Shown: positions 21,698 to 60,065, counted from the stretch's first letter. The stretch is DNA of 64,000 bases from Chrysemys picta bellii (GCF_011386835.1 NC_088803.1:32860001-32924000), one strand, 5' to 3'. Numbers and translations are program-made. Notes: a model not told the origin generated them from the sequence alone.

Positions 21698-22458
21698 CTG
21701 CAGCTCTCTCTACTGGGGCCTGAGATTAACCATCACAGGTATAACTGGAGCAATATAAATCTGACCCCCCCATAATGAACAGGCCAATGTGCAACTGTCA
21801 TGCTGGTCCTTCATCAATTCCACTGTCTGCTTCAGGAGAAGGGTGATTATCTCTCTGCAGGTTTGGGAACAGACCCTTGCAGAGAGAGGAGGAAGAAAAG
21901 GAATTAAGCCTCTTAAGTCTTGTCTTAATAGGAAAGTTTTACTAGTTATACCAGTATAATGTTCTGTATGGACACTTTTTTCAGCTTGGCTTATATATTG
22001 GAAGAAGAGCATGCACATTGTTACACCAGTATAACTTTCCTGTATAGATAAGCCCTGGAGTGAGGGAAGATGTGTATGTCATCCCCTCTTGATCACAAAT
22101 ACCAGTAACTCCAGCCACTGTACAGGAGTTTGCTGCTGCCACTAAGGCCTTGTCTTCACTAGGAAAGTTAGCTTGACAGCAGATAAATGCACCCATGTTG
22201 ACTAACTTCTGTTTAAACTGTAGTAAGACAAGGAATTGTAGGTTGAACCAGTGGTAACCTACCTGGGGGGAGGAAGGGTCACATGCCCCTCCCCAATCGC
22301 GGGGGGGGGGGGGGGGAGGGCACTGCTAAGGACTTCCACCCTTGGTGCAGGGAGTTTGTTTATAAACAGAGAAAGGGTGATTAAGATAACAAAAGGCTTG
22401 CCATTACATCAAATTAAGGATCCTTAGGTGATCTTGAAAGCATTCCCAGGCACTCCAG

Positions 22459-23639: not shown

Positions 23640-24183
23640 GTAAAAAGCCCAGAGAACGGGAAAGGAGCCGGTGACGAGAGAGCTGCAGAGTAAAGCCTGC
23701 AGCCAGCCCAGGAGAGGGAAAACGTTTCAGACTCCCCGCACAGCCCAGCTCCTGGCACTGCTCGCGGGGTCGGGGTCCAAAACCTGGCTGCCCCGTGCTG
23801 CTGGCCCAACTCAGGGCAGTCCGGCTCAGCGCGCGTCCCAGCGCAGGGGGGACCGGGACCGGGGAGCGGGGAGCGTGCGGAGCCAGGCCGTATTGGCAAA
23901 CCGGGAAGTGGGCGGGCTCCCCCGCCCAGCCCGCGGGGCACTGAAGCCGGCCGGTACGGGGAGGGATCTAGGGGCGGGCTTGGCCAAACACATTCAAAAG
24001 CAGCCAGCCAACCACAGCGGGGGAAGGAGAGGTAGCGGCCTCCCCAATCCGTGGCGGCGGCGGCGCGGCAGCTCGTTTGGGTTCAAACTCCCTATAAAAG
24101 GCCCCCGCTCAGCCTCAGCTCGGCCCCCTTTCGGTTCAGCTCCCCTCTCCCCGGGTTGGTAGCAGCGGCGGCCGCGGCTCCCC
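23640..24183 (+). promoter_or_regulatory. FAM83D CpG-island promoter with G2/M-type motifs
   Basis: CpG-rich. ATTGG 23892-23896, CCAAT 24044-24048, GC boxes, CHR-like TTCAAA 24082-24087, TATAAAAG 24093-24100. Confidence 0.75.
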
Positions 24184-24645
24184 ATGGCGAACCAGTCCCA
24201 GTGCCTGGAGGACGCGCCCGGCCGCTGGTCCCCCGGGGAGCCGAGCTCGCCCGAGCTCTACAGCGAGGCGCAGCGGCTGGCGCTGGAGGAGCTGGTGGCG
24301 GGCGGCCGGGCCGCTTTCCGCGCTTTCCTGCGCCGGGAGAAGGTGCCCGGCTTCCTCTCGGAGCCCGAGATCCAGGCCATCCTCCAGGCGGCCGCAACGC
24401 CGGCCGGGGCCGAGGACGGGGCGGCCGAGCCCTCGCTCAGCGCCTCGCTGGACTGCTCCTCGCTCACCTACTTCCCCGAGCAGTCGGACGTGGAGCCGCC
24501 CGTGCTGGAGCTGGGCTGGCCGGCCTTCTCCAGCGGCTCGTACCGCGGCCTCACCCGCGTGGAGGCGCTTTTCCAGCCCAGCTTCGGGGAGACCATCTAC
24601 AGCTGCAAGGAGGCGGTGCGCAGGCAGATCCGCTCGGCCAGGGAG
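24184..24645 (+). CDS. FAM83D: FAM83D exon 1 (copy 1, full-length gene)
   Basis: 462 nt; [18 protein letters not shown]...[24 protein letters not shown]...QIRSARE|GTGAGT (DUF1669 N-terminus); synteny with PPP1R16B and DHX35. Confidence 0.96.
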
Positions 24646-25000
24646 GTGAGTCCCTAGCCCGGCCTCTGCGCCCCCTTCCTGCCCGAGCCGAGCCTCCTCC
24701 TCCTCCGGGCGCCCAGGCTTGTGCCTGGGGAACTGGGCGTGTAGCATCGGCCCCCGGCTGGAAGTGGTTTCCATCACATACAGGGGTTTAGAGTTTGGTT
24801 TAATGACTCTCGGTCAGTACCCTCCCTATACAAACGGTTCCAGCACCCCATGGAAGCTGGGCTGCAGGGGAGAGTTTAACCCGCCCTGCTGCTGTGTCCT
24901 TCAGTGTGAACAATCTCTAGCTCAGCTCAGCTCCCCTAGCGCTGCCCTTGGCTCTAATGACTGGGTGAGTGTTTAATCTGGGCAGTTAATGAGGGTGAGC

Positions 25001-35272: not shown

Positions 35273-35440
35273 GTGATCGCTCTGGTTATGGATTCCTTCA
35301 CAGATATTGATATCTTCAGTGATCTTCAGGAAGCCTATAGAAAGCGGAAGATTCCGGTCTACATCCTTCTGGACCAAGATTTTCTACCCCACTTCATGGA
35401 AATGTGCAGGAGTCTGGGAGTCTGCCCTGAGCAGGAAGGT
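35273..35440 (+). CDS. FAM83D: FAM83D exon 2 (copy 1)
   Basis: CTGCAG|GTG...GGT|GTAAGT, 168 nt; [21 protein letters not shown]...VYILLD. Confidence 0.95.
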
Positions 35441-36703: not shown

Positions 36704-36828
36704 CTGATGAGAGTTCGAACTATAACTGGGAACACTTACTACACAAGGTCAGGAGCTAAAATTGTTGGGAAAGTCCATGAGAAGTTCATGTTAATTGATG
36801 GCATTAGAGTGACGACAGGCTCCTACAG
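36704..36828 (+). CDS. FAM83D: FAM83D exon 3 (copy 1), GC donor
   Basis: AAACAG|CTG...TACAG|GCAAGT, 125 nt; [41 protein letters not shown]. Confidence 0.93.
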
Positions 36829-37296
36829 GCAAGTTCTGGGGTCCTTTGCATTTCTTTAGGTCTTTGTGGGGAGGAGATTTCTGCAAGAAGTGAAAACTAA
36901 CTTGAAAGATATAGGATTGGCTCAAAAGCAATATTGGTGGTTCATCTATCTAATGCTATTAACTTTTTGAATCTGAATCAGCCTTGAGTAATGGGAAATT
37001 GAGAGTGGCTGCATTTCAATTGAGCGCTCAGATCCATAGAGGAGGATCATGGGGAGGAAAACATTTTGTCTCATTGCTTCTGTTTCTGGCAGGCTGAGCT
37101 CCCTAGTACGCTATTTCCTGTAACTTCCACCATTTGTGGGAACTTTCTACCATTTGTATTATTCAAACACCTACAGCCAGTTGTGCAAGGGCAAGCATAT
37201 TTCTCACTTAGTTTTTGTTGCTGCATCAGAGATGAAACCTAGTTGCATGGTGGATTCCTAAAAACCAGTGCACAACCACATGACCATACGTTAGCT

Positions 37297-37921: not shown

Positions 37922-38879
37922 CTTCACGTGGACTGATGGGAAATTAAATAGCAGTAACTTGTTGCTGCTGTCAGGCCAAGTGGCTGAACACTTTGATCTG
38001 GAGTTCAGGATCCTTTATGCACAGTCAAAACCGATCAGCCCTAAGCTGCCATCCAGCTGCCGGAGCAGTGGAATATTTGATCACCTGGTCAATGGAATAA
38101 AATCACCCAAAGACTACACTGTGGGAAACCTCTTGAGAGCCGAGTTGGCCAGACTGTCAAGCACCCCCAAGAAACCACTGAAAAAAACAGATTTGGCTAA
38201 CAACACTGAAGGAAGCAAATCCTATAACCTAGGTCCTTCCTACATCGGCACAGAGGAGTGGTTTGGAAGTCAGGAGGCCATAGTGGAACCAAAGGAGGTG
38301 AACAGCATGTCTACTCAAACTGAACCATGGGAAGAGAAGCCCACAGTGACACTCTCTAATGCTGTCACGCAAACCAGTGTTGTAATGGTAGCATCTGGAA
38401 CCCAAACCTCTGTTGCTGCTAGAATGGCTGGCACTCAAACAGTTGTGCCACGGAAGACTGCTATGACCCAGACAGACAAGAAGGAGAGTGTGGAAGAGCA
38501 TCTACTGCTGAGACAACAATCGAAAGAAGGATCTCCTTCATCTGGAAAGTCCACATCAACTTCTTCTAGTCTACGGTCACTTTCTTCATCATCTTCCCAG
38601 TGCTCTCTGGCAAGCTCTACCAGCTCGCTGTCCTCTCTGAGGTCCATTGAGTACTCTGGCAACCACAGGGCAGAGTACTTCCAAAAACTGCATAAAGAGA
38701 GGCAGGTCCACTACTCTGTTATCAGGTCCAAACTTAACCATATGGTTGCTATCCTCTCCCGAAGGGGACGCGTGCCTGAAAACTGTACAAGCTGCCACGT
38801 TGTAAGCTGCAATGTAAAACAGAGGCGTGAGATCAGCACCAGCCTACTCAGCCTCAGAGACATTTCAGTGTTCAAATAA
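37922..38879 (+). CDS. FAM83D: FAM83D exon 4 (copy 1); spliced CDS 1713 nt = 570 aa
   Basis: CAATAG|C TTC ACG TGG; FTWTDGKLNSSN, HFDLEFRILYAQSKPISPK, LARLSSTP, five TQT motifs (38313-38474), Ser-rich tract, IRSKLNHMVAILSRR; TAA ends at 38879. Confidence 0.96.
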
Positions 38880-44490: not shown

Positions 44491-45348
44491 CAGGGCTGCC
44501 CAGAGGGGGGGGCAAGTGGGGCAATTTGCCCCAGGACCCGCAGGGGCCCCCACGAGAATATCAGAGGCTCCCCCCCAGTGCCTCAGCACGCCGTGTCCAA
44601 GAGCGGCCCTGGACAGCACTGCAGTGGTGTGGCCTGAGCTCCTCCCACTCGGAGCCGCGGGGTAAGGGGGTGGGGCTCCGGGCCAAGAGGCGGGAGCTCA
44701 GGTCCCGTGGAGCCATGCTGCTGCAGCGCTGTCTAGGGCTGTTCATGGATGCCACGTGCTGAGGCTCTGGGAAAGGGGGGGAGGCGGGAGTAAGCAGCAT
44801 GGTAAGGGGGCCAGGGCCAGGCACCCCCTGACCCCATCCCCCCCACAGCCCTGACCCCCAGCTCTGAGCCCAGCCCCTCTGAACCGGACACCTTCCCCAA
44901 CCCCCATCCCCCCTACAGCCCTGACCCCCAGCTCCAAGCCCAGTCCCTCTGAGCCGGGCACCCCCCAACGCCATCCCCCCACAGCCCTGAGTCCAGCCCC
45001 TGTGAGCCGGGCATCCCCCTCCCGACCCAGAGCCCAGCTCCCCACCCAGCCCTGGGCAACAGCAGCACCACCCCCAGGCAGTGATGGCCCATTGGCACCA
45101 ACCATCACCATCACCCAGCGACAGCCCATTATGTAATTGCAAATGTATACATACCATTAAAGCATTTAATGTTTTTAAATAATGTATTTTGTGTATTTTC
45201 AAATTATTAAAAATTAATTTTTGAATTTATTTCAATGGTTATTTTTACATTTCCAAATACATGTTACTAGAGTATTGCAACTTTTTTTATGGAAGGGGCC
45301 CCCGAAATTGCTTTGCCCCAGGCCCCCTGAATCCTCTGGGCGGCCCTG
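44491..45348. mobile_element. hAT-type MITE (858 bp) just upstream of the FAM83D copy-2 promoter
   Basis: TIRs CAGGGCTGCCCAGAG / CTCTGGGCGGCCCTG (14/15); perfect 8-bp TSD CATTAGGG (44483-44490, 45349-45356). Confidence 0.92.
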
Positions 45349-45356
45349 CATTAGGG

Positions 45357-45555
45357 AGCCTACCAGCCGCTTGAACTCAACGACCGTCGCTCCCTTCAGC
45401 CTGGGAAGGTGCAAGAGGAGGAGGCAGGGCCCGGCGCTGGGTGGGAGGTGGAGGAGAATTGGGGTGAGGGGGCGTTGGCTGGGTTTAAAACTCCTCATAA
45501 AAGGCCTGGTTTAGTGACTACCCTTGCGGGCTAATAGCGGCGGCCGCGGCTCCCC
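45357..45555 (+). promoter_or_regulatory. Candidate core promoter of the FAM83D-like copy 2
   Basis: ATTGG 45458-45462; GGGTTTAAAACTCCTCATAAAAGG (45481-45504) aligns to copy-1 GGGTTCAAACTCCCTATAAAAGG. Confidence 0.6.
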
Positions 45556-46017
45556 ATGGCGAACCAGTCCCAGTGCCTGGAGGACGCCCCCGGCCGCTGG
45601 TTCCCCGGGGAGCCGAGCTCGCCCGAGCTCTACAGCGAGGCGCAGCGGCTGGCGCTGGAGGAGCTGGTGGCGGGCGGCCGGGCCGCTTTCCGCGCTTTCC
45701 TGCGCCGGGAGAAGGTGCCCGGCTTCCTCTCGGAGCCCGAGATCCAGGCCATCCTCCAGGCGGCCGCAACGCCGGCCGGGGCCGAGGACGGGGCGGCCGA
45801 GCCCTCGCTCAGCGCCTCGCTGGACTGCTCCTCGCTCACCTACTTCCCCGAGCAGTCGGACGTGGAGCCGCCCGTGCTGGAGCTGGGCTGGCCGGCCTTC
45901 TCCAGCGGCTCGTACCGCGGCCTCACCCGCGTGGAGGCGCTTTTCCAGCCCAGCTTCGGGGAGACCATCTACAGCTGCAAGGAGGCGGTGCGCAGGCAGA
46001 TCCGCTCGGCCAGGGAG
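45556..46017 (+). CDS. FAM83D-like paralogue (copy 2) exon 1
   Basis: 462 nt, differs from 24184-24645 at only 2 positions (45588 synonymous, 45602 S16F); donor GAG|GTGAGT. Confidence 0.85.
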
Positions 46018-46856
46018 GTGAGTCCCCAGCCCGGCCTCTGCGCCCCCTTCCTGCCCGAGCCGAGCCTCCTCCTCCGGGCGCCCTGGGAAACCCGGGGGGA
46101 TACTGCTCTGCACAACGCTCCTCTGTGCCTGGGGAACTAGGAGCCTAGCCCTGGACGCCGGTGTTGCACTAAAGACCCGCTGGCTTTGGTCCCTAATCTC
46201 CAACCAGCTAGGATTAAATTCTGAAATCTGCACTTTAGCATTATTATTTATTGCATTTAAAAACAAATCACTACTTTAATATTTGGTCTTGTAGAAACGT
46301 GTGACATTCATGGTGGTGGTGAGCTTTCCTCTGTGGATAGGCCATCACTACAATCCTGCAGGAGAATGAAGGAAGGGAGAGGCTCCTCAGGGCAGGGATC
46401 CTGTCTGCTTTGTGATAAAATCTCTCATACTTTAGAAACTAGTCTTTCGGCAAGGTATGTGTTATATGCAGAATAAATGACAGTGTAGTGTGCTTATGGA
46501 CACTCATTGGCCTTGGCTAGCTCACTTGGGACCTTGGCAATTATGAGTAATGTGGTCATCCCAAAACACATGCTTGTGGCACCTTAGTATCACACCATCA
46601 CACAGTGTGTCTTTTAAATAAAACCTGATAACTTGTGTCTAACGCACAATGGGTGCTATGTACATAATTCACCTGGGGATCACTCATGCCACGTCTAGGA
46701 TGGAATATAGCAGCCTTCTGCTTGTACAGTAACTCCTCACTTAACATAGTAGTTATGTGCCTGAAAAATGCAACCTTAAGCGAAACAATGTTAAGCGAAT
46801 CCAATTTCCCCATAAGAATTAATGTGAATGGGGGGAAAGTAGGTTCAAGGGAAATT

Positions 46857-46984
46857 NNNNNNNNNNNNNNNNNNNNNNNNNNNNNNNNNNNNNNNNNNNN
46901 NNNNNNNNNNNNNNNNNNNNNNNNNNNNNNNNNNNNNNNNNNNNNNNNNNNNNNNNNNNNNNNNNNNNNNNNNNNNNNNNNNNN
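46857..46984. other. Assembly gap (128 N)
   Basis: Run of N. Flanks are collinear with about 60 bp of CA/TA-rich sequence (57640-57699) in the intact inverted MITE copy. Confidence 0.99.
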
Positions 46985-47209
46985 CAAACAATTTAATACT
47001 GTACACAGCAATGATTATTGTGAAGCTTGGTTGAGGTGATGGAGGAAGAGGGTGGATATTTCCCAGGGAATGCCTTACTGCTAAATGATGAACTAGTACT
47101 CTGCTGAGCCCTCAAGGGTTAACACATTGTTGTTAATGCAGCTTCACACTCTACAAGGCAGCACAAATGGAGGGAGGGGAGACAGCATGGCAGACAGAGA
47201 TACACACCC

Positions 47210-47242
<33 letters not shown>

Positions 47243-47302
47243 TGCGCTCATTGCCCCTTTAAGTACGCTGACCCCACTCTAAGTACACTGCCTTTTTAAG
47301 TA

Positions 47303-47495
47303 TCAGGGGGTAGCTGTGTTAGTCTGTATCTACAAAAACAACGAGTCTGGTGGCACCTTAAAGACTAACAGATTTATTTGGGCATAAGCTTTCGTGGGTA
47401 AAATGCATCTGAAGAAGTGAGGTTTTTACCCACGAAAGCTTATGCCCAAATAAATCTGTTAGTCTTTAAGGTGCCACCAGACTCCTTGTTGTTTT
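47303..47495. mobile_element. Penelope-derived palindromic mini-insertion nested in the Tigger MITE
   Basis: Perfect 61-bp inverted repeat (47343-47403 / 47424-47484, 20-nt loop). 14-bp TSD TGCCTTTTTAAGTA (47289-47302, 47496-47509). The empty site is present once, reverse-complemented, near 57307-57320. Confidence 0.85.
47405..47445 (+). ncRNA. Minimal type I hammerhead ribozyme motif (Penelope-type)
   Basis: Stem I GCAT/ATGC, core CTGAAGA, stem II GTG(A)GGT-TTTT-ACCCAC, GAAA, palindromic stem III AGCT, NUH = CUU. Confidence 0.65.
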
Positions 47496-47992
47496 TGCCT
47501 TTTTAAGTAGATCAGCAAGTTGAGACAGCAGCTGCTGCCAGCAAGCTCCCTCCCGTGTTCCCCCCCTGCTCTATGGAGATGGAGTAAGTCGGGGGCAGGG
47601 AGAGGGGGACACCCTGACATTAGCCTCCCTCCCCCCCTGCACAGCAAGCAGGAGGCTCCTGGGAGCAGCTCCAAGGCAGAGGGCAGGAGCAGCACGTGGC
47701 AGTGTGGGGAGGGACAGCTGAACTGCCTGGCAATTGATGGCCTGCTGGGCGACTGCCACACAGGGAACTTAGGAGAGCAGGGAGCTGATGGTCCGCCCTG
47801 GTTCCAAGCCCCCACCAGCTAGCTGCAATGGGCTGCTCTTTCTGCAAGCAGTGGACAAAGCAGGGGGCCGCCAAATGATGTTATAAGGGAGGATTGTACA
47901 ACTTTGAACAAGCATGTTCTCTAATTGATCAACAGCATAACAACAAAACAGCGTTAACCGGGACGACTTTAAGTGAGGAGTTACTGTAGTCG

Positions 47993-49272
47993 TAGAATCA
48001 TAGAATATTAGGGTTGGAAGAGACCTCAGGAGGTCATCTAGTCCAACCCCGTGCTCAAAGCAGGACCAACACCGACTAAATCATCCCAGTCAGGGTTTTT
48101 CAAGCTGGGCCTTAAAAACCTCTAAGGATGGAGATTCCACCACCTCCCTAGGTAACCCATTCCAGTACTTCACCACCCTCCTAGTGAAATAGTGTTTCCT
48201 AAGTTCCAACCTAGACCTCCACTACTGCAACTTGAGACCATTGCTGCTTCTGTCATCTGCCACCACTGATAACAGCCGAGCTACATCCTCTTTGGAACCC
48301 CCCTTCAGGTAGTTGAAGGCTGCTATCAGATCCTCCCTCACTCCTTGTAAGTCATGTGCTCCAGCCCCCTAATCATTTTCGTTGCCCTCTGCTGGACTCT
48401 CTCTCCAATTTGTCCACATCCCTTCTGTAGTGGGGGGGGCCAAAACTGGATGCAATACTCCAGGTGTGGCCTCACCAGTGCCGAATAGAGGGGAATAATC
48501 ATTTCCCTTGATCTGCTGGCAGTGCTCCTACTAATACAGCCCAACATGCCGTTGGCCTTCTTGGCAACAAGGGCACACTGCTGACTCATATCCAGCTTCT
48601 CATCCACTGTAATCCCCAGGTCCTTTTCTGCAGAACTGCTGCTTAGCCAGTCGGTCCCCAGCCTGTAGCGGTGCATGGGATTCTTCCTTCCTAAGTGCAG
48701 GACTCTGCACTTATCCTTGTTGAACCCCATCAGATTTCTTTTGGCCCAATCCTCCAATTTGTCTAGGTCATTCTGGATCCTATCCCTACCCTCCAGCTAA
48801 TCTACCTCTCCCCCCAGTTTAGTGTCATCTGCAAACTTGCTGAGGGTGCGATTCATCCCATCATCCAGATCATTAATAAAGATGTTGAACAAAACCGGCC
48901 CCAGGACTGACCCCTGGGCACTCCGCTTAATACCGGCTGCCAACTAGACACTGAGCCATTGATCACTACCCGTTGAGCCCGACAATCTAGCCAGCTTTCT
49001 ATCCACCTTATAGTCCATTCATCCAATCCATACTTCTTTAACTTGCTGGCAAGAATACTGTGGGAGACCGTATCAAAAGCTTTGCTAAAGTCAAGCTATA
49101 TGACATCCACCGCTTTCCTCATATCCACAGAGCCAGTTATCTCATCATCGAAGGCAATCAGGTTGGTCAGGCATGACTTGCCCTTGATGAATCCATGTTG
49201 AATGTTCCTGATCACCTTCCTCTCCTCCAAGTGCTTCAAAATGAATTCCTTGAGGACCTGCTCTATGATTTT
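47993..49272 (-). mobile_element. 5'-truncated CR1 LINE (about 1.3 kb)
   Basis: Minus strand carries QHGF, DFSKAFD and FADD RT motifs, LYSALVRPHLEYC, the 3'UTR and an ATTCTATG tail. Confidence 0.93.
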
Positions 49273-49460
49273 GCTGTGGCTAGTCTTAAATTAGTCCCAC
49301 TTAAGTTTTTCAGAGGAGAACTGAAGAACATCTCTACTTAGATTTCTCCCTATGATATCAGCTATGAAGGCAGAGTGTAATTATCCAAGCTGGATCTTGG
49401 CCAGGCCATCTAGACTAATAATGCTTCCTTTGTTCAAAATGTTGTGGGATCCCTAATGAC

Positions 49461-51026
49461 TAGGGCTGTCAATTAATCACAGTTAACTCACGCGATTAAC
49501 TCAAAAAAAATTAATCATGATTAATTGCAGTTTTAATCACATTGTTAAACAATAGAATACCAATTGAAGTTTATTAAATATTTTTGGATTTTTTTCTAGA
49601 TTTTCAAATATATTGATTTTAAATACAACACAGAATACAGTCTACAGTGCTCACTTTATATTATTTTGATTACAAATATTTGCACTGTAAAAATTATAAA
49701 AAAAGAGACATAGTATTTTTCAATTCACCTCATACAAGTACTATAATGCAATTGCTTTATTGTGAAAGTGCAATTTACAAATGTATTTTTGTTTGTTTGT
49801 TACATAACTGCACTCAAAAACAAAACAATGTAAAACTTTAGAGCCTATAAGTCCACTCAGTCCTACTTCTTGTTCAGCCAATCGCTAAGACATACAACAT
49901 TGTTTACATTTTTGGGAGATAATGCTGCCTGCTTCTTATTTACAGTGTCACCTGAAAGCGAGAACAGGCGTTCACATGGCACTTTTTTAGCTGGCATTGC
50001 AAGGTATTTACATGTCAGATACGCTGGTGACGCTTGTTCAAAAAAAATGCATTAATTAAATTTTGACTGAGCTCACTGTGGGGGAGAACAGTATGTTTCC
50101 TGCTGTTTTACCTGCAGTCTGCAATATATTTCATGTTATAGCAGTCTCGGATGATGAACCAGCACATGTTTTTCATTTTAAGAACACTATCACTGCAGAT
50201 TTGACAAAACGCAAAGAAGGTACAATGTGAGATTTCTAAAGATAGCTACAGCACTCAGCCCAAGGTTTAAGAATCTGAAGTGCCTTCCAAAATCTCAGAG
50301 GGACAAGGTGTGGAGCATGCTTTCAGAAGTCTTAAGAGAGTAACACTCCGATGCGGGAACCACACAGAAAGAAAATCAACCGTCTGCTGGTGGCATCTGA
50401 CGCAGATGATGAAAGTGAACATGCGCTGGTCTGCACTGTTATCAAGCAGAACGCACCATCAGCATGGACGCGTGTCCTCTGGAATGATGGTTGAAGCATG
50501 AAGGGACATATGAATCTTTAGCTTATCTGACACGATAAATATCTTGCGACGCCGGCTACAACAATGCCATGCGAACGCCTGTTCTCACTTTCAGGTGACA
50601 TTGTGAACAAGAAGCAGGCAGCATTATCTCCTGCAAATGTAAACAGACTTGTTTGTCTGAGTGACTGGCTGAACAAGAAGTAGGATTCTGTGGGCTTGTA
50701 GTCTCTAAAGTTTTACATTGTTATTTTTGAATGCAGTTATTTTTTTGTACATAATTCTACATTTGTAAGTTCAACTTTCATGGTGAAGAGATTGCATTAC
50801 AGTACTTGTATGAGGTGAATTGAAAAATTATTTTTTCAGCACAAATATTTGCAATCAAAAATAAATTGAGCACTGTACTCTGTTCTGTCAATATATTTGA
50901 AAATGTAGAAAACATCCAAAAATATGTAAATAAATGGTATTCTATTATTGTGTGATTTAATCATGATTAATTTTTTTAATCATGCGATTAATTGTGATTA
51001 TTTTTTTTAATCACTCCACAGCCCTA
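49461..51026 (+). mobile_element. Internally deleted hAT transposon (1566 bp) with C-terminal dimerisation-domain remnant
   Basis: TIRs TAGGGCTGT / ACAGCCCTA; perfect 8-bp TSD CTAATGAC. Remnants PRFKNLKCL and KYLATPATTMPCERLFSLSGDIVNKKQAALSPANVNRLVCL (about 50250-50681). Confidence 0.92.
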
Positions 51027-52763
51027 CTAATGACAATACAGTATTTCTTCTCATCTAAAGAAATGATAGTAAAGGGGAAAACAATTCACACCAGTGAAGG
51101 TATTTGCTGTGCTGAGAAGTTCCTTTTCCTTGCATACTCAAACCCTTTGCAGATACCCCTGGTGAAGTCAGTGATCCTTTCCAAGTTTTGGGACTGAAGC
51201 AGTCCTTCTCTTCAAGCAGTACATTTACAGGAAGAGGGGACAATCCCACAATCTGTGACTTAGGATGTGTCTATCAAAATGGCTTGCATTTATGTTGCAT
51301 CTCCAACTTGGGGTACTTCAGTGTAAGAAACTTCAAGCTAAGAATTAACCATCTTGCCAAAGTTCTGTTTTGGACTGGATATTTACTCCCCATTTCCATA
51401 TCTCAGTTTATTAAGTGGCTGAATGGTATTAAAGGTCAACTATTTGGTTGTGAAAGGCTGGTGGTGAAACACTTATTTTTAAAAAAATGTGTCTAAGTAA
51501 GCTTCTTACTAGCCCACTCATCTGGTGTTGGAGAGCAACCTGTGGTCCCTGCCTGCCCTGGTGGGTCTTGGGATCAATTTAGAGGTGGGGGAAATGAAGG
51601 AACGTTAAGACCTATGTGGCTCAACCTTGCAGGTGAAGTCCTGCAATACACAAGAGGGAACATAGAAAACAAATATAATTAAACAGTGAGCAAGATGCTG
51701 CTGAGCAAAGACAAACTGAGATAGTGCTCCCTGATAAGTGATGATTCAGTACTTGATTCTGAATGTATATAAGATTCCTTTTCCTGAGTAACTTATGCAT
51801 TGACAGAAAGGACTGACAACCAGCAATCTCTCTTTCCCAATTCACTTACCTGCCTTCAGCTATTTAATTGTGTCATTTACACCCTATGAACCAAAGAGAT
51901 GTAGTCCCTATTCGCAGACTCTCTAGTTCCTGCTATTGCAATTCCAGGTGTACAAAAGGAAACCACGTGGATGGTATAGCAAAGAATCTTAGATGTACTT
52001 TCTTTTTATACATTATCAAATGGTAAGTGTCAAAGACAGAATGAATACTCTAAGAAGCAGACTCCCATCATCCTACGAGTTCAGTATCTGTTTCCATTTT
52101 ACTATGTATGACTTTGTGGAAGCGATGATATGCAGAGATTGATTATAATGGGTATCCATTATACTTTAGGTGTGTGTGAAGCAACATATTTGACACCTAA
52201 CAGATGTATAGTACCCATGTGTTTTCCCTTTGAAGTGCTGTTAGCTTAACCTAAACCCATTCCCTTACCCTTCCATCCCTCAGTATCATGGTGTCCTCTC
52301 TTACCTTTGATGCAGAGCAATATAAAAAGCTTTCCCACTGTAGAGCCTGCACATACAGCTCTGATTCAGCCAGAGATTTGTCTGTCATCAACAAGTTGGT
52401 TCAAGAAAAGCTATTACGTCATCCACCTTATCTCTCTAATATCCAGGGACTGATGCAGCTACAACATTACATATCTAAATTATCCAGTACTTGACACACT
52501 TGTGGAATGCTGCTAAGAATGACCGAACAGGTTGACTATGTCACAATAAAATAACACTTAAAAAAAGTAGCAAGGAAAATGGAAACTTGTCTAGGGAATA
52601 TGGTATCAATAAAAGGAAACCAATCAGGGGTCTACTTAATTTGGAAGCTAAATTGATTCATACACCCTCTGCCCCTTCTAAATCTTCCCCGGGGTGCTGA
52701 GAAAGATAAGACATAGGTCACAAGGTTTTCTTGAACTAATGGTTTCTTCTGTATTTGTTTCAG

Positions 52764-52931
52764 GTTATTGCTGTGGTTATGGATACCTTCACAGACATTG
52801 ATATCTTCAAAGACCTTCAGGAAGCCTGTAGCAAGCGGAAAGTTAGTGTGTACATCCTTTTAGATCGTGCTTCATTTCCCCACTTTCTGAAAATGTGCAG
52901 AAATCTAGGAGTTGATCTTGAGCAGGAGAAG
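52764..52931 (+). CDS. FAM83D-like copy 2 exon 2
   Basis: TTTCAG|GTT...AAG|GTAGGC, 168 nt, open; [34 protein letters not shown]; 41/168 nt differences vs copy 1 (manual count). Confidence 0.88.
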
Positions 52932-53772
52932 GTAGGCACTGTGATACTTATGGCAACAAACAACTGGTTATTGGCCCTATTGCAACCATAACATCTAAGT
53001 TTTAAAAAGAAATATGATCTATGTAGCGCTTGCTCTTTTTTTGTAAGTTTTAACTGATCTTGAAAAACAAGGCATTAACTGCACAAACGATGATGTCTTT
53101 AGAGGTGCATTAACACCCATGTATTATATTGAAGTGATTTTTGTCTTTAACACTTGTTATGGGATTGCTGAAAGCACTGCAGACACTTTTTTCTTTATTT
53201 AAATAGCTGTAGCCATCTCATAAAGTAAATTGACTTTCCTTAGAATTGGGAATCTTTCTGACGAATGTCTTAATGTTTCTGGCCCAGATGATTAAAGTTT
53301 TTTCCTTCTTCTAGGAAATCTGTTGAAAGAGAGGTTCTCTTCCCACAAACATAAATTATTTAAAGGGGGAGGGGACTCATACAGGGTAAACACATAATCC
53401 ACTATATTTTTTAGTCACTTCTTTTGTAAGGACACAAAGGAGGTTTCAGTTCAGTTTAGTCCATTTCTTATTCCCTGAAGGACAAATACGTTGAGTGGTC
53501 TTGTTAGTCCAACAGTGTCAAGGCTCTCTGCTTTACAAAGAGGGAGACTAAATTCTGGTTCAGATTTTCACTTCGTGTTTTGCTCCCTAAGCCACAAGAA
53601 CCCCTTAGAATGGTCATTTGACTCCTTAGGAGAGAGAATCTTATGCCACTCAGCAGCATCCTGTGTTAGCTGATCAACAGCGGTCTTTAATGTTTGTAAG
53701 TTTCCCTCTTAGGTAGAAACATTTTCTCTTGATATGTCAAAACTTAAATACGTTTTTTTCTCTTTCAAACAG

Positions 53773-53897
53773 CTGATGAGAGTTCGAACTATATCGGGAA
53801 ACACTTATTGCACAAGGTCAGGAGTCAAAATTGTGGGGAAGGTCCAAGAAAAGTTTATCTTGGTTGATGGCATAAGAGTGACAACAGGTTCCTACAG
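53773..53897 (+). CDS. FAM83D-like copy 2 exon 3, GC donor
   Basis: AAACAG|CTG...TACAG|GCAAGT, 125 nt; [41 protein letters not shown]; 18/125 nt differences vs copy 1. Confidence 0.88.
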
Positions 53898-54168
53898 GCA
53901 AGTACCCTATTTCTTTTCATGTCCTTGTCTCCTATGACTTCTTTGGATTGTGGGGTGAAGGGTAATAGTACAAAACTGTTTTTCTTGTGAGCTGTTGATC
54001 GTATGTGATGTTTGCACTAAAAATTATGTTGCTAACTATCCGTAGTACAGTAACAATCTAGTTTCTTGTATTGAAAGAGAACATGTATTGGCACTATTTC
54101 AACCTTTGTGTGGGTGTATTATTTATTTTAATAAATTAACATCATTTGTGAATTTTCTCATTATTAAG

Positions 54169-54559
54169 TTTCACATGGACTGATGGGAAACTAAGCAGCA
54201 GTAACATCTTGATTCTGTCGGGCCCAGCAGTCGCACACTTTGACCTGGAATTCCGGATCCTTTTTGCTCGGTCAAAGCCCATCAACCCCAAACTGTCATC
54301 CAGTTGCAAGAAGAGTGGAATGTTTAATCAGCTGGTTAGGAGAACAAAGGCTTGCAGTGACTTGATGAAGGAAAACTTCTTGAGAATGGATTTTTTCTAC
54401 CTTAGAGCATTTGTAGGAAACATGAGAAGGAAACAGAGCTTCTTGTATGCCTCCAGGGAGGCAAAGTGTGAGTCAAATATCATCATGCAAGCATCTCCAC
54501 CGTTGACTGAGAGGAATGTCTCTGCAGTCATGAGGCCACGTTGGAGCATAGAGAGGTGA
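54169..54559 (+). CDS. FAM83D-like copy 2 exon 4 (short); spliced CDS 1146 nt = 381 aa
   Basis: ATTAAG|T TTC ACA TGG; FTWTDGKLSSSN, HFDLEFRILFARSKPINPK, then a diverged tail ending RPRWSIER-TGA (54557-54559). Confidence 0.82.

Positions 54560-59544: not shown

Positions 59545-60065
<521 letters not shown>

What the first reader, a model, noticed from the sequence alone, without database searches (positions are those of the whole stretch)
45536..46083. Exon 1 of the two FAM83D copies is ~99.6% identical while exons 2-3 are ~76-86% identical: localised gene conversion
Seen: a tract of about 550 bp (copy 1 24164-24714, copy 2 45536-46083) runs from 20 nt upstream of the ATG into intron 1. It has only 2 substitutions in the 462-nt coding part, plus one substitution and a CTC-repeat indel in the intron. 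Identity drops abruptly at both ends, yet diverged promoter homology continues upstream and TGTGCCTGGGGAACT resumes downstream. The duplication therefore already included exon 1, and the tract was homogenised recently. Inference: ongoing non-allelic, possibly GC-biased, conversion locks the N-terminal half of DUF1669 and the CpG island together while the rest of the paralogue diverges. Read collapse during polishing is the main alternative.
Basis: partly seen in the sequence, partly recalled or inferred. Interest (0 to 1): 0.8.

Follow-up and report, generated by a model that had tools for sequence, protein, structure and literature searches.

The report
Exon-1 gene conversion between FAM83D duplicates
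Two neighbouring copies of the cell-division gene FAM83D keep their first exon almost letter-identical by repeatedly copying it between each other, and this happens not only in this turtle but also in other turtles, birds, crocodilians and most lizards checked, although the rest of the two genes split before those groups parted.

Summary
Window 24164-24717 and 45536-46086 are 98.7% identical. Exon 1 CDS has 2 differences in 462 nt. Exon 2 is 76.6% identical, exon 3 is 85.6%, and the flanks do not align.

The two genes are a long FAM83D (L, 570 aa, identical to the Chrysemys picta bellii protein) and a short tandem paralogue (S, 381 aa). S has a full SACK1/DUF1669 domain and no C-terminal tail.

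Assembly collapse is rejected:
- Eight other assemblies (four turtles, two birds, one lizard) show the same 510-650 bp tract at 97.4-99.8%.
- Contigs from three other individuals join S-specific flanks to the tract.

- On exons 2-4, S forms one clade (100/98) of turtles, birds, lizards and alligator.
- On exon 1, L and S pair by species. S monophyly is rejected at p-AU 2.6e-64.
- L-S dS is 0-0.017 in exon 1 and 0.65-1.95 elsewhere.
- S orthologues have omega 0.18-0.34, so S is under purifying selection.

The tract ends at indels, which fits homology-limited interlocus gene conversion. Rhineura and skinks have escaped it. GC bias is plausible (GC3 88-100%) but not shown.

This is a known kind of process. 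This case seems unreported and is unusually long-lasting.

The parts
24164..24717 (+). Converted tract in the long paralogue (L). It runs from 20 nt upstream of the ATG, through exon 1, to about 70 nt into intron 1.
   Evidence: blastn and global alignment: 98.7% identical to 45536-46086. GC 74.5%, CpG o/e 0.85.
45536..46086 (+). Converted tract in the short paralogue (S). It is an isolated GC/CpG-rich island.
   Evidence: GC 74.6% and CpG o/e 0.84, in flanks of 46-48% GC and o/e 0.27-0.38. Independent contigs join it to S-specific flanks.
24184..24645 (+). L exon 1 CDS: 154 codons, first half of the SACK1/DUF1669 domain.
   Evidence: Gene model. The spliced product equals P0001, FAM83D of Chrysemys picta bellii, exactly.
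45556..46017 (+). S exon 1 CDS: 154 codons.
   Evidence: Pfam SACK1 model positions 7-138 of 274. Two differences from L exon 1.
35273..35440 (+). L exon 2.
   Evidence: Splice sites read; model.
36704..36828 (+). L exon 3, followed by a GC-AG intron (donor GCAAGT).
37922..38879 (+). L exon 4 with stop. The tail carries five TQT motifs.
52764..52931 (+). S exon 2, 76.6% identical to L exon 2.
53773..53897 (+). S exon 3, 85.6% identical to L exon 3, with the same GC donor.
54169..54559 (+). S exon 4 with stop. The product is 381 aa, with no TQT tail.
   Evidence: A 381-aa gene is annotated at the same place in Emys, Mauremys, Emydura and Caretta.
24075..24103 (+). L core promoter block: GTTTGGGTTCAAACTCCCTATAAAAGGCC (TATA box plus a TTCAAA motif).
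   Evidence: Alignment of five turtles, L and S. It is homologous to 45478-45506 but diverged.
45478..45506 (+). S core promoter block: GCTGGGTTTAAAACTCCTCATAAAAGGCC.
   Evidence: It is conserved among the S copies of five turtles.
46085..46123 (+). Intron-1 segment kept in S (and in Caretta and Emydura L) but deleted from L of Chrysemys, Emys and Mauremys. This indel is the downstream edge of the tract in this genome.
   Evidence: Multiple alignment.
24720..24734 (+). TGTGCCTGGGGAACT: residual intron homology just beyond the deletion. The S counterpart is 46124-46138.
24724..24800 (+). Start of a dispersed repeat in L intron 1, which ends all L/S homology.
   Evidence: The own-genome search finds dozens of 81-94% copies of query positions 625-701. 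The element is absent from S and from Emydura L.
46857..46984 (.). Run of 128 N in S intron 1, 770 bp beyond the tract. Left untouched.
   Evidence: It lies in a high-copy repeat zone (depth table).

Best explanation
The window holds two tandem FAM83D (SACK1D) genes, between PPP1R16B and DHX35. The long gene (L, 570 aa) has the normal structure. The short one (S, 381 aa) keeps the whole CK1-anchoring SACK1 domain and lacks the tail.

The duplication predates the split of turtles, archosaurs and lepidosaurs. Since then exons 2-4 have diverged to near saturation at silent sites.

Exon 1, plus 20-90 nt of 5' leader and 0-160 nt of intron 1, is repeatedly homogenised by interlocus (non-allelic) gene conversion. 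A break in or near the GC-rich exon 1 of one copy is repaired from the other copy, 9-44 kb away.

The tract is the one long uninterrupted block of homology left, about 0.5 kb. It stops where indels or a repeat insertion interrupt the homology.

Shown: the tract, its boundaries, by-species grouping of exon 1 against by-paralogue grouping of the rest, homogenised silent and intron sites, purifying selection on S, and escape in some squamates.

Inferred: that conversion has been continuous rather than episodic, since recombination needs high identity; that promoter or CpG-island breaks start it; and any GC bias or selective benefit.
For: Within the window:
- The tract is 98.7% identical against 63-86% in the other exons and unalignable flanks. 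P is about 1e-19.

Other assemblies, each with two physical exon-1 copies:
- Emys 97.5% over 558 bp.
- Mauremys 98.9% over 556 bp.
- Emydura 97.4% over 649 bp.
- Caretta, two assemblies, 99.8% and 99.4% over 621 bp.
- Rissa 98.6% over 509 bp.
- Dromaius 99.1% over 574 bp.
- Hemicordylus 99.8% over 523 bp.
- Identity is about 100% inside and about 50% outside in all of them.

Proteins of 20 species pairs:
- Exon 1 is 98-100% identical in 16 of the 18 pairs with both exon-1 sequences; the other two are Tiliqua (87%) and Rhineura (68%). Exons 2-4 are 54-93% per exon in all 20.

Trees:
- On exons 2-4, S is one clade (100/98) and L is one clade (94/82), with opossum outside both.
- On exon-1 protein, the L/S label needs 22 changes.
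- On exon-1 DNA, L and S pair by species with 87-100% support. By-species versus by-paralogue sites are 4:0 (Chrysemys-Emys), 8:0 (Chrysemys-Mauremys) and 34:0 (Chrysemys-Emydura).
- The AU test rejects S monophyly on the tract, p 2.6e-64.

Silent sites and selection:
- L-S dS is 0-0.017 in exon 1 and 0.65-1.95 in exons 2-4.
- S orthologues have omega 0.18-0.34.

Flanks and boundaries:
- S-specific and L-specific flanks are orthologous across species.
- Boundaries coincide with indels and a repeat insertion.

Natural controls:
- In Rhineura, L and S exon 1 are 74% identical in DNA and 68% in protein.
- In Tiliqua, only the 5' half of exon 1 is identical.

Independent individuals:
- Contigs of three DNA runs from three studies carry the S-flank-to-tract junctions at about single depth and the tract at about double depth.
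Against: - No conversion event was observed directly.
- Continuity over the whole history is inferred, not shown.
- The exact number of L/S differences in this assembly may be affected by polishing. At 45768-45769 the window has AA in both copies, while contigs of three other individuals read GC. The S-state C at 45588 was seen in none of them. However, contigs drop minority paths.
- Emys L and S are not resolved as sisters. Two Emys-Mauremys sites group by paralogue, so homogenisation is not instantaneous.
- GC bias and the initiating lesion are untested.
- The Rhineura, Tiliqua and crocodilian statements rest partly on annotated protein models.
Confidence: 0.9

Rival explanations
1. Assembly or polishing artefact. 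Reads from L exon 1 were collapsed onto a gap or a diverged S exon 1, so the near-identity is not in the animal.
For: - The tract is very GC-rich (74.6%).
- It lies between high-copy repeats and 770 bp from a 128-N run.
- At 45768-45769 both copies of the window carry AA where other individuals' contigs read GC. This would fit some cross-polishing of details.
Against: - Eight other assemblies of seven species show the same tract with the same kind of boundaries.
- Contigs from three independent DNA runs run from S-only flank into the tract on both sides: 45343-45576, 45325-45568, 46046-46754 and others.
- Those runs give the tract about twice the flank depth.
- Annotated S genes elsewhere start at their own exon 1.
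Confidence: 0.02
2. A single recent conversion, or a few, private to this turtle lineage. The deep pattern in other groups would then be coincidence or annotation borrowing of exon 1.
For: In this window alone the data cannot tell one event from many. Some bird and lizard protein pairs are 100% identical in exon 1, which could come from a shared exon in gene models.
Against: - DNA of Rissa, Dromaius and Hemicordylus shows two physical copies 8.6-44 kb apart.
- Lineage-specific substitutions are shared by L and S in every lineage.
- The AU test gives p 2.6e-64.
Confidence: 0.03
3. No conversion. Exon 1 is frozen by extreme purifying selection at the nucleotide level, for example an overlapping regulatory element in the CpG island.
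For: - Exon 1 has lower between-species dS than the rest of the gene (0.05-0.39 against 0.13-0.94).
- GC3 is near 100%.
Both point to some constraint or bias on silent sites.
Against: - Exon 1 does change between species: 34 fixed differences between Chrysemys and Emydura, and about 69% protein identity between turtle and bird.
- Each change is shared by both paralogues of a species.
- Intron and 5'-leader bases inside the tract are homogenised too.
- Where the identity is lost (Rhineura, skinks) both genes persist.
Confidence: 0.02
4. Independent, lineage-specific duplications of FAM83D, each young enough that exon 1 has not yet diverged, with fast divergence of exons 2-4.
For: Within any one species the exon-1 identity looks like a young duplicate.
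Against: - S sequences of turtles, birds, lizards and alligator form one clade on exons 2-4 (100/98).
- They share the 374-388 aa length, the exon sizes and the position between L and DHX35.
- dS of exons 2-4 is 0.65-1.95.
- S-specific flanks are orthologous across turtles.
Confidence: 0.01

Closest known systems
Interlocus gene conversion between tandem duplicates with a bounded 5' tract. The textbook case is the human fetal globin genes HBG1/HBG2 (own knowledge, not checked here). A genome-wide survey of human segmental duplications is PMC3790853 (abstract seen).
   Same: - A short tract is homogenised between neighbouring paralogues on one chromosome.
- Identity drops sharply at the edges.
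- The flanks keep the old divergence.
- Silent and non-coding sites are included.
   Different: Here the tract is one exon of about 0.5 kb. It is held for the whole history of a duplication shared by turtles, birds, crocodilians and lizards, not within one young primate duplicate.
Mammalian BEX/WEX/GASP genes: coding and non-coding chimaerism sustained by gene conversion (PMC1274310, abstract seen).
   Same: Only part of each paralogue, at the 5' end, evolves in concert while the remainder diverges.
   Different: It is a different gene family, in mammals only, and multi-member. I did not read the paper beyond its abstract, so tract anatomy was not compared.
Long-lasting concerted evolution (PMC6053082, prokaryotes). 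[quoted passage not shown]
   Same: Paralogues stay closer within a genome than to their orthologues over very deep time.
   Different: Those are whole prokaryotic genes. This is a single exon of a vertebrate gene pair with long, unalignable introns.
GC-biased gene conversion in arm-to-arm converting palindromes (PMC8981503, abstract seen).
   Same: Frequent intrachromosomal conversion goes with very high GC at free sites. Here GC3 is 88-100%.
   Different: Bias was not demonstrated here. Exon 1 is also part of a promoter CpG island in L, which alone could explain high GC.
FAM83D/SACK1D of mammals: a CK1-alpha anchor at the mitotic spindle (PMC6726907, PMC12803952, PMC6008594).
   Same: L has the SACK1 domain (Pfam), the 4-exon structure, TQT motifs in the tail and the PPP1R16B-DHX35 neighbourhood.
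   Different: The papers I found describe one FAM83D gene. The short paralogue S has no tail, so it has no equivalent of the C-terminal helix that binds HMMR in human SACK1D (aa 516-556, PMC12803952). I found no mention of S in the literature searched.

Membership tests
Interlocus (non-allelic) gene conversion / concerted evolution | Inside the tract, paralogues of one species are closer to each other than to their orthologues. | tested here: met
   In the DNA tree, L and S pair by species with 87-100% support in 7 of 8 species. Site patterns are 4:0 to 44:0. The AU test rejects S monophyly, p 2.6e-64. The protein tree needs 22 label changes.
Interlocus (non-allelic) gene conversion / concerted evolution | Outside the tract, the same genes group by paralogue, so the duplication is older than the species. 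| tested here: met
   On exons 2-4, the S clade has 100/98 support and the L clade 94/82. L-specific and S-specific flanks match their counterparts in Emys and Mauremys at 83-97%.
Interlocus (non-allelic) gene conversion / concerted evolution | Silent and non-coding sites are homogenised too, so the cause is not selection on the protein. | tested here: met
   dS is 0-0.017 in exon 1 against 0.65-1.95 in exons 2-4. The 5' leader and about 70 nt of intron lie inside the tract.
Interlocus (non-allelic) gene conversion / concerted evolution | A discrete tract with abrupt ends at breaks in homology. | tested here: met
   Sliding identity goes from about 100% to about 50% within 50 nt in nine assemblies. 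The ends sit at a 5'-leader indel and at a deletion and repeat insertion in intron 1.
Interlocus (non-allelic) gene conversion / concerted evolution | Direct observation of transfer events, in pedigrees, sperm typing or shared polymorphism between paralogues in a population. | not testable with these tools
   Only contigs were available. They hint that L/S differences vary among individuals: 45602 reads T in X2 and C in X1 and X8. The two Caretta assemblies differ, with 1 against 4 L/S differences.
GC-biased gene conversion | An excess of AT-to-GC fixation in the converted tract, relative to unconverted controls. | tested here: inconclusive
   - GC3 is 88-100% in exon 1 against 45-55% in exons 2-4.
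- Rhineura, which escaped conversion, has GC3 of 73-74% in both copies.
- The escaped half of Tiliqua S exon 1 is still at 86%.
- No single-copy outgroup DNA was fetched.
FAM83D / SACK1D gene family | N-terminal SACK1 (DUF1669) domain. | tested here: met
   Pfam PF07894 matches at E 3e-100 (L, aa 20-289) and 2e-100 (Malaclemys S, 376/382 identical to the window's S, aa 19-289).
FAM83D / SACK1D gene family | C-terminal tail with the HMMR-binding helix and dynein-light-chain (TQT) motifs. | tested here: not met
   This holds for S only. S ends at residue 381 and has no TQT motif, while L has five. The HMMR-binding helix of L was not tested. S is therefore a FAM83D-derived paralogue, not a full FAM83D.

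The most novel reading that the evidence does not exclude
The exon-1 identity is not just a passive by-product of leftover homology. It is one of the longest-running single-exon concerted evolutions in a vertebrate protein-coding gene pair, dating from the common ancestor of turtles, birds, crocodilians and lizards, which own knowledge puts at roughly 280 million years.

On this reading it is kept because L and S must present an identical N-terminal half of the CK1-anchoring SACK1 domain. For example, the tail-less S may compete with or buffer L for CK1-alpha away from the spindle. Lineages that lost the identity (Rhineura, skinks) would then have changed that relationship.
Probability: 0.15. 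Interest if true: 0.75.

Novelty: new member of a known kind. Interest (0 to 1): 0.55.

Why it matters
It gives a clean, replicated natural experiment on interlocus gene conversion. One 0.5-kb exon is kept identical between two functional genes in dozens of species, while silent sites in the rest of the gene are near saturation.
- The tract edges can be read to the base and coincide with indels.
- Some lineages have escaped wholly (Rhineura) or for half the exon (skinks).

That lets several things be measured on one locus:
- How much homology conversion needs.
- How often it happens.
- Whether it is GC-biased.
- Whether promoter-associated breaks drive it, by comparing birds without PRDM9 with turtles and lizards that have it (own knowledge).

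There are practical consequences. Exon 1 misleads orthology calls and gene trees of FAM83D in sauropsids. The database names A-like, B-like and -like are applied inconsistently. Short-read mapping to exon 1 is ambiguous.

It also draws attention to an undescribed, conserved, tail-less CK1 anchor (S) in reptiles and birds, chicken included.

Tried and rejected
- A look-up of the window's own L protein returned nothing, because the own genome is withheld. I used relatives instead.
- The RNA run X15 laid on the S tract is from a related species (15 differences, 7 gaps). Its contig runs into the intron and does not reach the S-specific leader. It says nothing on S transcription.
- A search for runs holding S exon 4 found nine small runs of the same organism label with 91-97% of its words. 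Their kind (RNA) is only guessed, and I had no read-laying run left. Expression of S is suggested, not shown.
- The GC-bias test through lineages that escaped conversion was inconclusive.
- Distance between the copies does not explain escape. Hemicordylus (44.4 kb) still converts and Rhineura (46.3 kb) does not.
- The direction of transfer could not be read from the five L/S differences. Derived states sit on both copies.
- Contig depth ratios (tract about 1.6-4 times the flanks) agree with two collapsed copies. The tool warns that depth is no copy number, so I use them only as support.
- Literature searches for FAM83D with gene conversion, paralogues in birds, or duplication in chicken found no paper.
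- The 128-N run was not filled or looked up.

Full report
**1. What is in the window**

Reading the two places and comparing the two halves of the window by blastn confirms the observation. 24164-24717 matches 45536-46086 at 98.7% over 554 columns. The only other match between the two gene copies is exon 2, at 76.6%.

A global alignment lists every difference in the tract:
- 24216 G / 45588 C, synonymous.
- 24230 C / 45602 T, Ser/Phe.
- 24655 T / 46027 C, in the intron.
- A 3-nt CTC-repeat indel at 24693-24695.
- 24715 A / 46084 T, at the edge.

Identities from the same call are 99.6% for exon 1 CDS, 76.6% for exon 2, 85.6% for exon 3 and about 63% for the start of exon 4. The 200 bp on either side are no better than shuffled sequence.

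A permutation test on the aligned coding sequence gives 464 nt as the longest stretch with at most two differences. The maximum in 2000 permutations is 144 nt, and the binomial P is 1e-19.

The whole genome holds only these two near-identical copies of exon 1. The next best hits are other FAM83 genes at 72-78%.

**2. The two genes**

Splice sites were read directly.
- L has exons 24184-24645, 35273-35440, 36704-36828 and 37922-38879.
- S has exons 45556-46017, 52764-52931, 53773-53897 and 54169-54559.

The first three exons have the same sizes in both genes (462, 168 and 125 nt). Both have the same unusual GC donor after exon 3.

The L product (570 aa) is letter-identical to FAM83D of Chrysemys picta bellii. 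The S product is 381 aa.

Both carry a complete SACK1/DUF1669 domain (Pfam, about aa 20-289). Exon 1 encodes the first half of that domain. L has five TQT motifs in its tail and S has none.

**3. Not an assembly artefact**

The L proteins of other species led to their loci. In Emys, Mauremys, Emydura and Caretta a 381-aa SACK1 gene is annotated just downstream of L. In Rissa and Dromaius the S product is 378-379 aa, and the order is PPP1R16B - L - S - DHX35.

Self-comparison of each locus finds the same tract:

| Species | Identity | Length |
|---|---|---|
| Emys | 97.5% | 558 bp |
| Mauremys | 98.9% | 556 bp |
| Emydura | 97.4% | 649 bp |
| Caretta (two assemblies) | 99.8% and 99.4% | 621 bp |
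| Rissa | 98.6% | 509 bp |
| Dromaius | 99.1% | 574 bp |
| Hemicordylus | 99.8% | 523 bp |

Identity profiles go from about 50% to about 100% and back within 50 nt in every case.

Logan contigs of three DNA runs from three studies were laid on 45000-46850.
- S-only flank contigs run into the tract: 45324-45533, 45343-45576 and 45325-45568 upstream, and 46046-46754 and others downstream.
- A separate contig covers the tract at roughly twice the flank depth. That is what two near-identical copies give in a de Bruijn graph.

The same contigs show that details vary among individuals.
- 45602 reads T in one run and C in two.
- 45588 reads G in all three.
- 45768-45769 reads GC where the window has AA in both copies.

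Contigs drop minority paths, so I do not read more into this. The exact count of L/S differences in the reference should be checked with long reads.

**4. How old and how general**

A protein search restricted to exon 1 returned long and short proteins side by side from turtles, lizards and birds. A search restricted to the S-specific part returned S-type proteins from all turtle suborders, many birds including chicken, several lizards and Alligator. No mammal or amphibian appeared among them.

In 16 of the 18 species pairs with both exon-1 sequences, exon 1 is 98-100% identical at the protein level; Tiliqua and Rhineura are lower (see Escapes). Exons 2, 3 and 4a are 54-93% in all 20 pairs.

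Trees separate the two histories.
- On residues 155-300, S is one clade (100/98) and L is one clade (94/82). An opossum FAM83D lies outside both and amphibians are at the root.
- On exon 1, the L/S label needs 22 changes and pairs form by species.
- On tract DNA, L and S are sisters in Chrysemys (98/94), Mauremys (87/95), Emydura (100/98), Caretta (99/99), Rissa (99/97), Dromaius (97/92) and Hemicordylus (100/100). Only Emys is unresolved.
- Sites grouping by species outnumber sites grouping by paralogue: 4:0 against Emys, 8:0 against Mauremys, 14:0 against Caretta and 34:0 against Emydura.
- Forcing S to be one clade on the tract costs 301.6 log-likelihood units, p-AU 2.6e-64.

Silent divergence between L and S is 0-0.017 in exon 1 and 0.65-1.95 in the next 150 codons.

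S is not a pseudogene. Its orthologues differ with omega 0.18-0.34, and its length is conserved.

Conversion has therefore acted after the Chrysemys-Emys split, and separately in every major lineage. The duplication itself predates the turtle-bird-lizard split.

**5. Escapes**

- Rhineura L and S exon 1 are only 68% identical in protein and 74.3% in DNA.
- In Tiliqua the first half of exon 1 is identical and the second half is diverged. That diverged half resembles the S of another skink, Lerista.
- Alligator S and Crocodylus L share crocodilian-specific residues in exon 1.

These cases show that nothing but homogenisation holds exon 1 together. They also show that the tract can shrink.

**6. 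Anatomy of the edges**

An alignment of five turtles, L and S, shows a homologous but diverged core promoter in both genes. The TATA box with its neighbouring motif lies at L 24075-24103 and S 45478-45506.

Between the TATA box and about -20 to -33, the two 5' leaders differ by an indel. The tract starts right after it.

Downstream, Caretta and Emydura keep L/S identity to about +590 and +625. In Chrysemys, Emys and Mauremys, L has lost about 40 bp that S keeps (46085-46123), and the tract ends exactly there. Then come 20 bp of residual homology, including TGTGCCTGGGGAACT. After that, cryptodiran L carries a dispersed repeat (24724 onward; many genomic copies).

The tract is therefore the longest uninterrupted homology block. 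Exons 2 and 3 are short (168 and 125 nt) and sit in long, unalignable introns.

**7. Mechanism**

The best reading is recurrent interlocus gene conversion limited by homology. It is self-sustaining as long as events outpace mutation.

What is inferred from general knowledge of homologous recombination:
- Continuity over time.
- Initiation by breaks in the promoter CpG island.

S's tract is a GC and CpG island of its own (74.6% GC, o/e 0.84) set in 46-48% GC flanks. L's island extends upstream.

GC3 is 88-100% in exon 1 against 45-55% elsewhere. Between-species dS of exon 1 is lower than in the rest of the gene. Both would fit GC-biased repair.

The only unconverted controls are ambiguous. Rhineura has GC3 of 73-74% in both copies. 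The escaped half of Tiliqua S is still at 86%.

**8. Comparison with what is known**

Partial-gene concerted evolution by conversion is a classic process. The library holds surveys and single cases (PMC3790853, PMC1274310). [quoted passage not shown]

I found no paper linking FAM83D with gene conversion, with a paralogue in birds, or with a duplication in chicken.

FAM83D/SACK1D is known as the anchor that brings CK1-alpha to the spindle. It does so through a C-terminal helix that binds HMMR (PMC6726907, PMC12803952). N-terminal SACK1 mutations in FAM83G abolish CK1 binding (PMC6798324 abstract), so the exon-1 half of the domain is functionally relevant.

**9. Verdict**

The process is of a known kind. 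This instance appears unreported and is unusual for its age, its restriction to one exon and its replication across sauropsids.

Noticed in passing
window 45556-54559 (S gene): The short paralogue is a conserved, selected gene: 374-388 aa in turtles, birds including chicken, and lizards, with omega 0.18-0.34. It has a full CK1-anchoring SACK1 domain but no tail. Databases name it inconsistently (FAM83D-A-like, -B-like, -like). Nine small, probably RNA, runs of the same organism label hold 91-97% of the words of its exon 4.
   Followed up: partly
L012 14701-14836 vs 22060-22195 (Rissa): In the gull, exon 3 of L and S is 95% identical in DNA; in the gull and in Calidris it is 93% in protein. In turtles it is about 85%. 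Rissa S exon 3 is closer to turtle L than to turtle S. This may be a second, L-to-S conversion tract in shorebirds.
   Followed up: partly
L018/L020 (Rhineura), L019 (Tiliqua): Some squamates have escaped exon-1 homogenisation. In Rhineura the whole exon has escaped (74% DNA identity). In skinks only the 3' half has.
   Followed up: partly
window 59545-60042 (+): An intronless open frame matches ribosomal protein S5 domains (uS5/RPS2 type; Pfam E 2e-25 and 4e-11). It is most likely a processed pseudogene.
   Followed up: partly
window 45000-45371 and 46674-46850: Very high-copy repeats (contig depth 10^4-10^5) bracket the S promoter and tract. Only 45372-46673 is unique. The 128-N run at 46857-46984 lies in the downstream repeat zone.
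   Followed up: no
window 36823-36834 and 53892-53903: Intron 3 of both paralogues starts with GC (AG|GCAAGT). This is a rare GC-AG intron kept in both copies since the duplication.
   Followed up: no
window 24075-24103 and 45478-45506: Both promoters keep a TATA box preceded by TTCAAA (L) or TTTAAA (S). This resembles a cell-cycle homology region as found in G2/M genes (own knowledge, not tested).
   Followed up: no
window 24396-24397 and 45768-45769: Both copies of the window read AA (Ala-Thr). Contigs of three other individuals, and the proteins of other turtles, have GC (Ala-Pro). Either a derived double change has already spread to both paralogues in the reference lineage, or it is a polishing effect.
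   Followed up: partly
P0143 vs P0009 (Carettochelys): The S copy carries a 7-residue tandem duplication (EPEAGVA) inside exon 1 that L lacks. An indel can therefore sit inside an otherwise homogenised tract.
   Followed up: no
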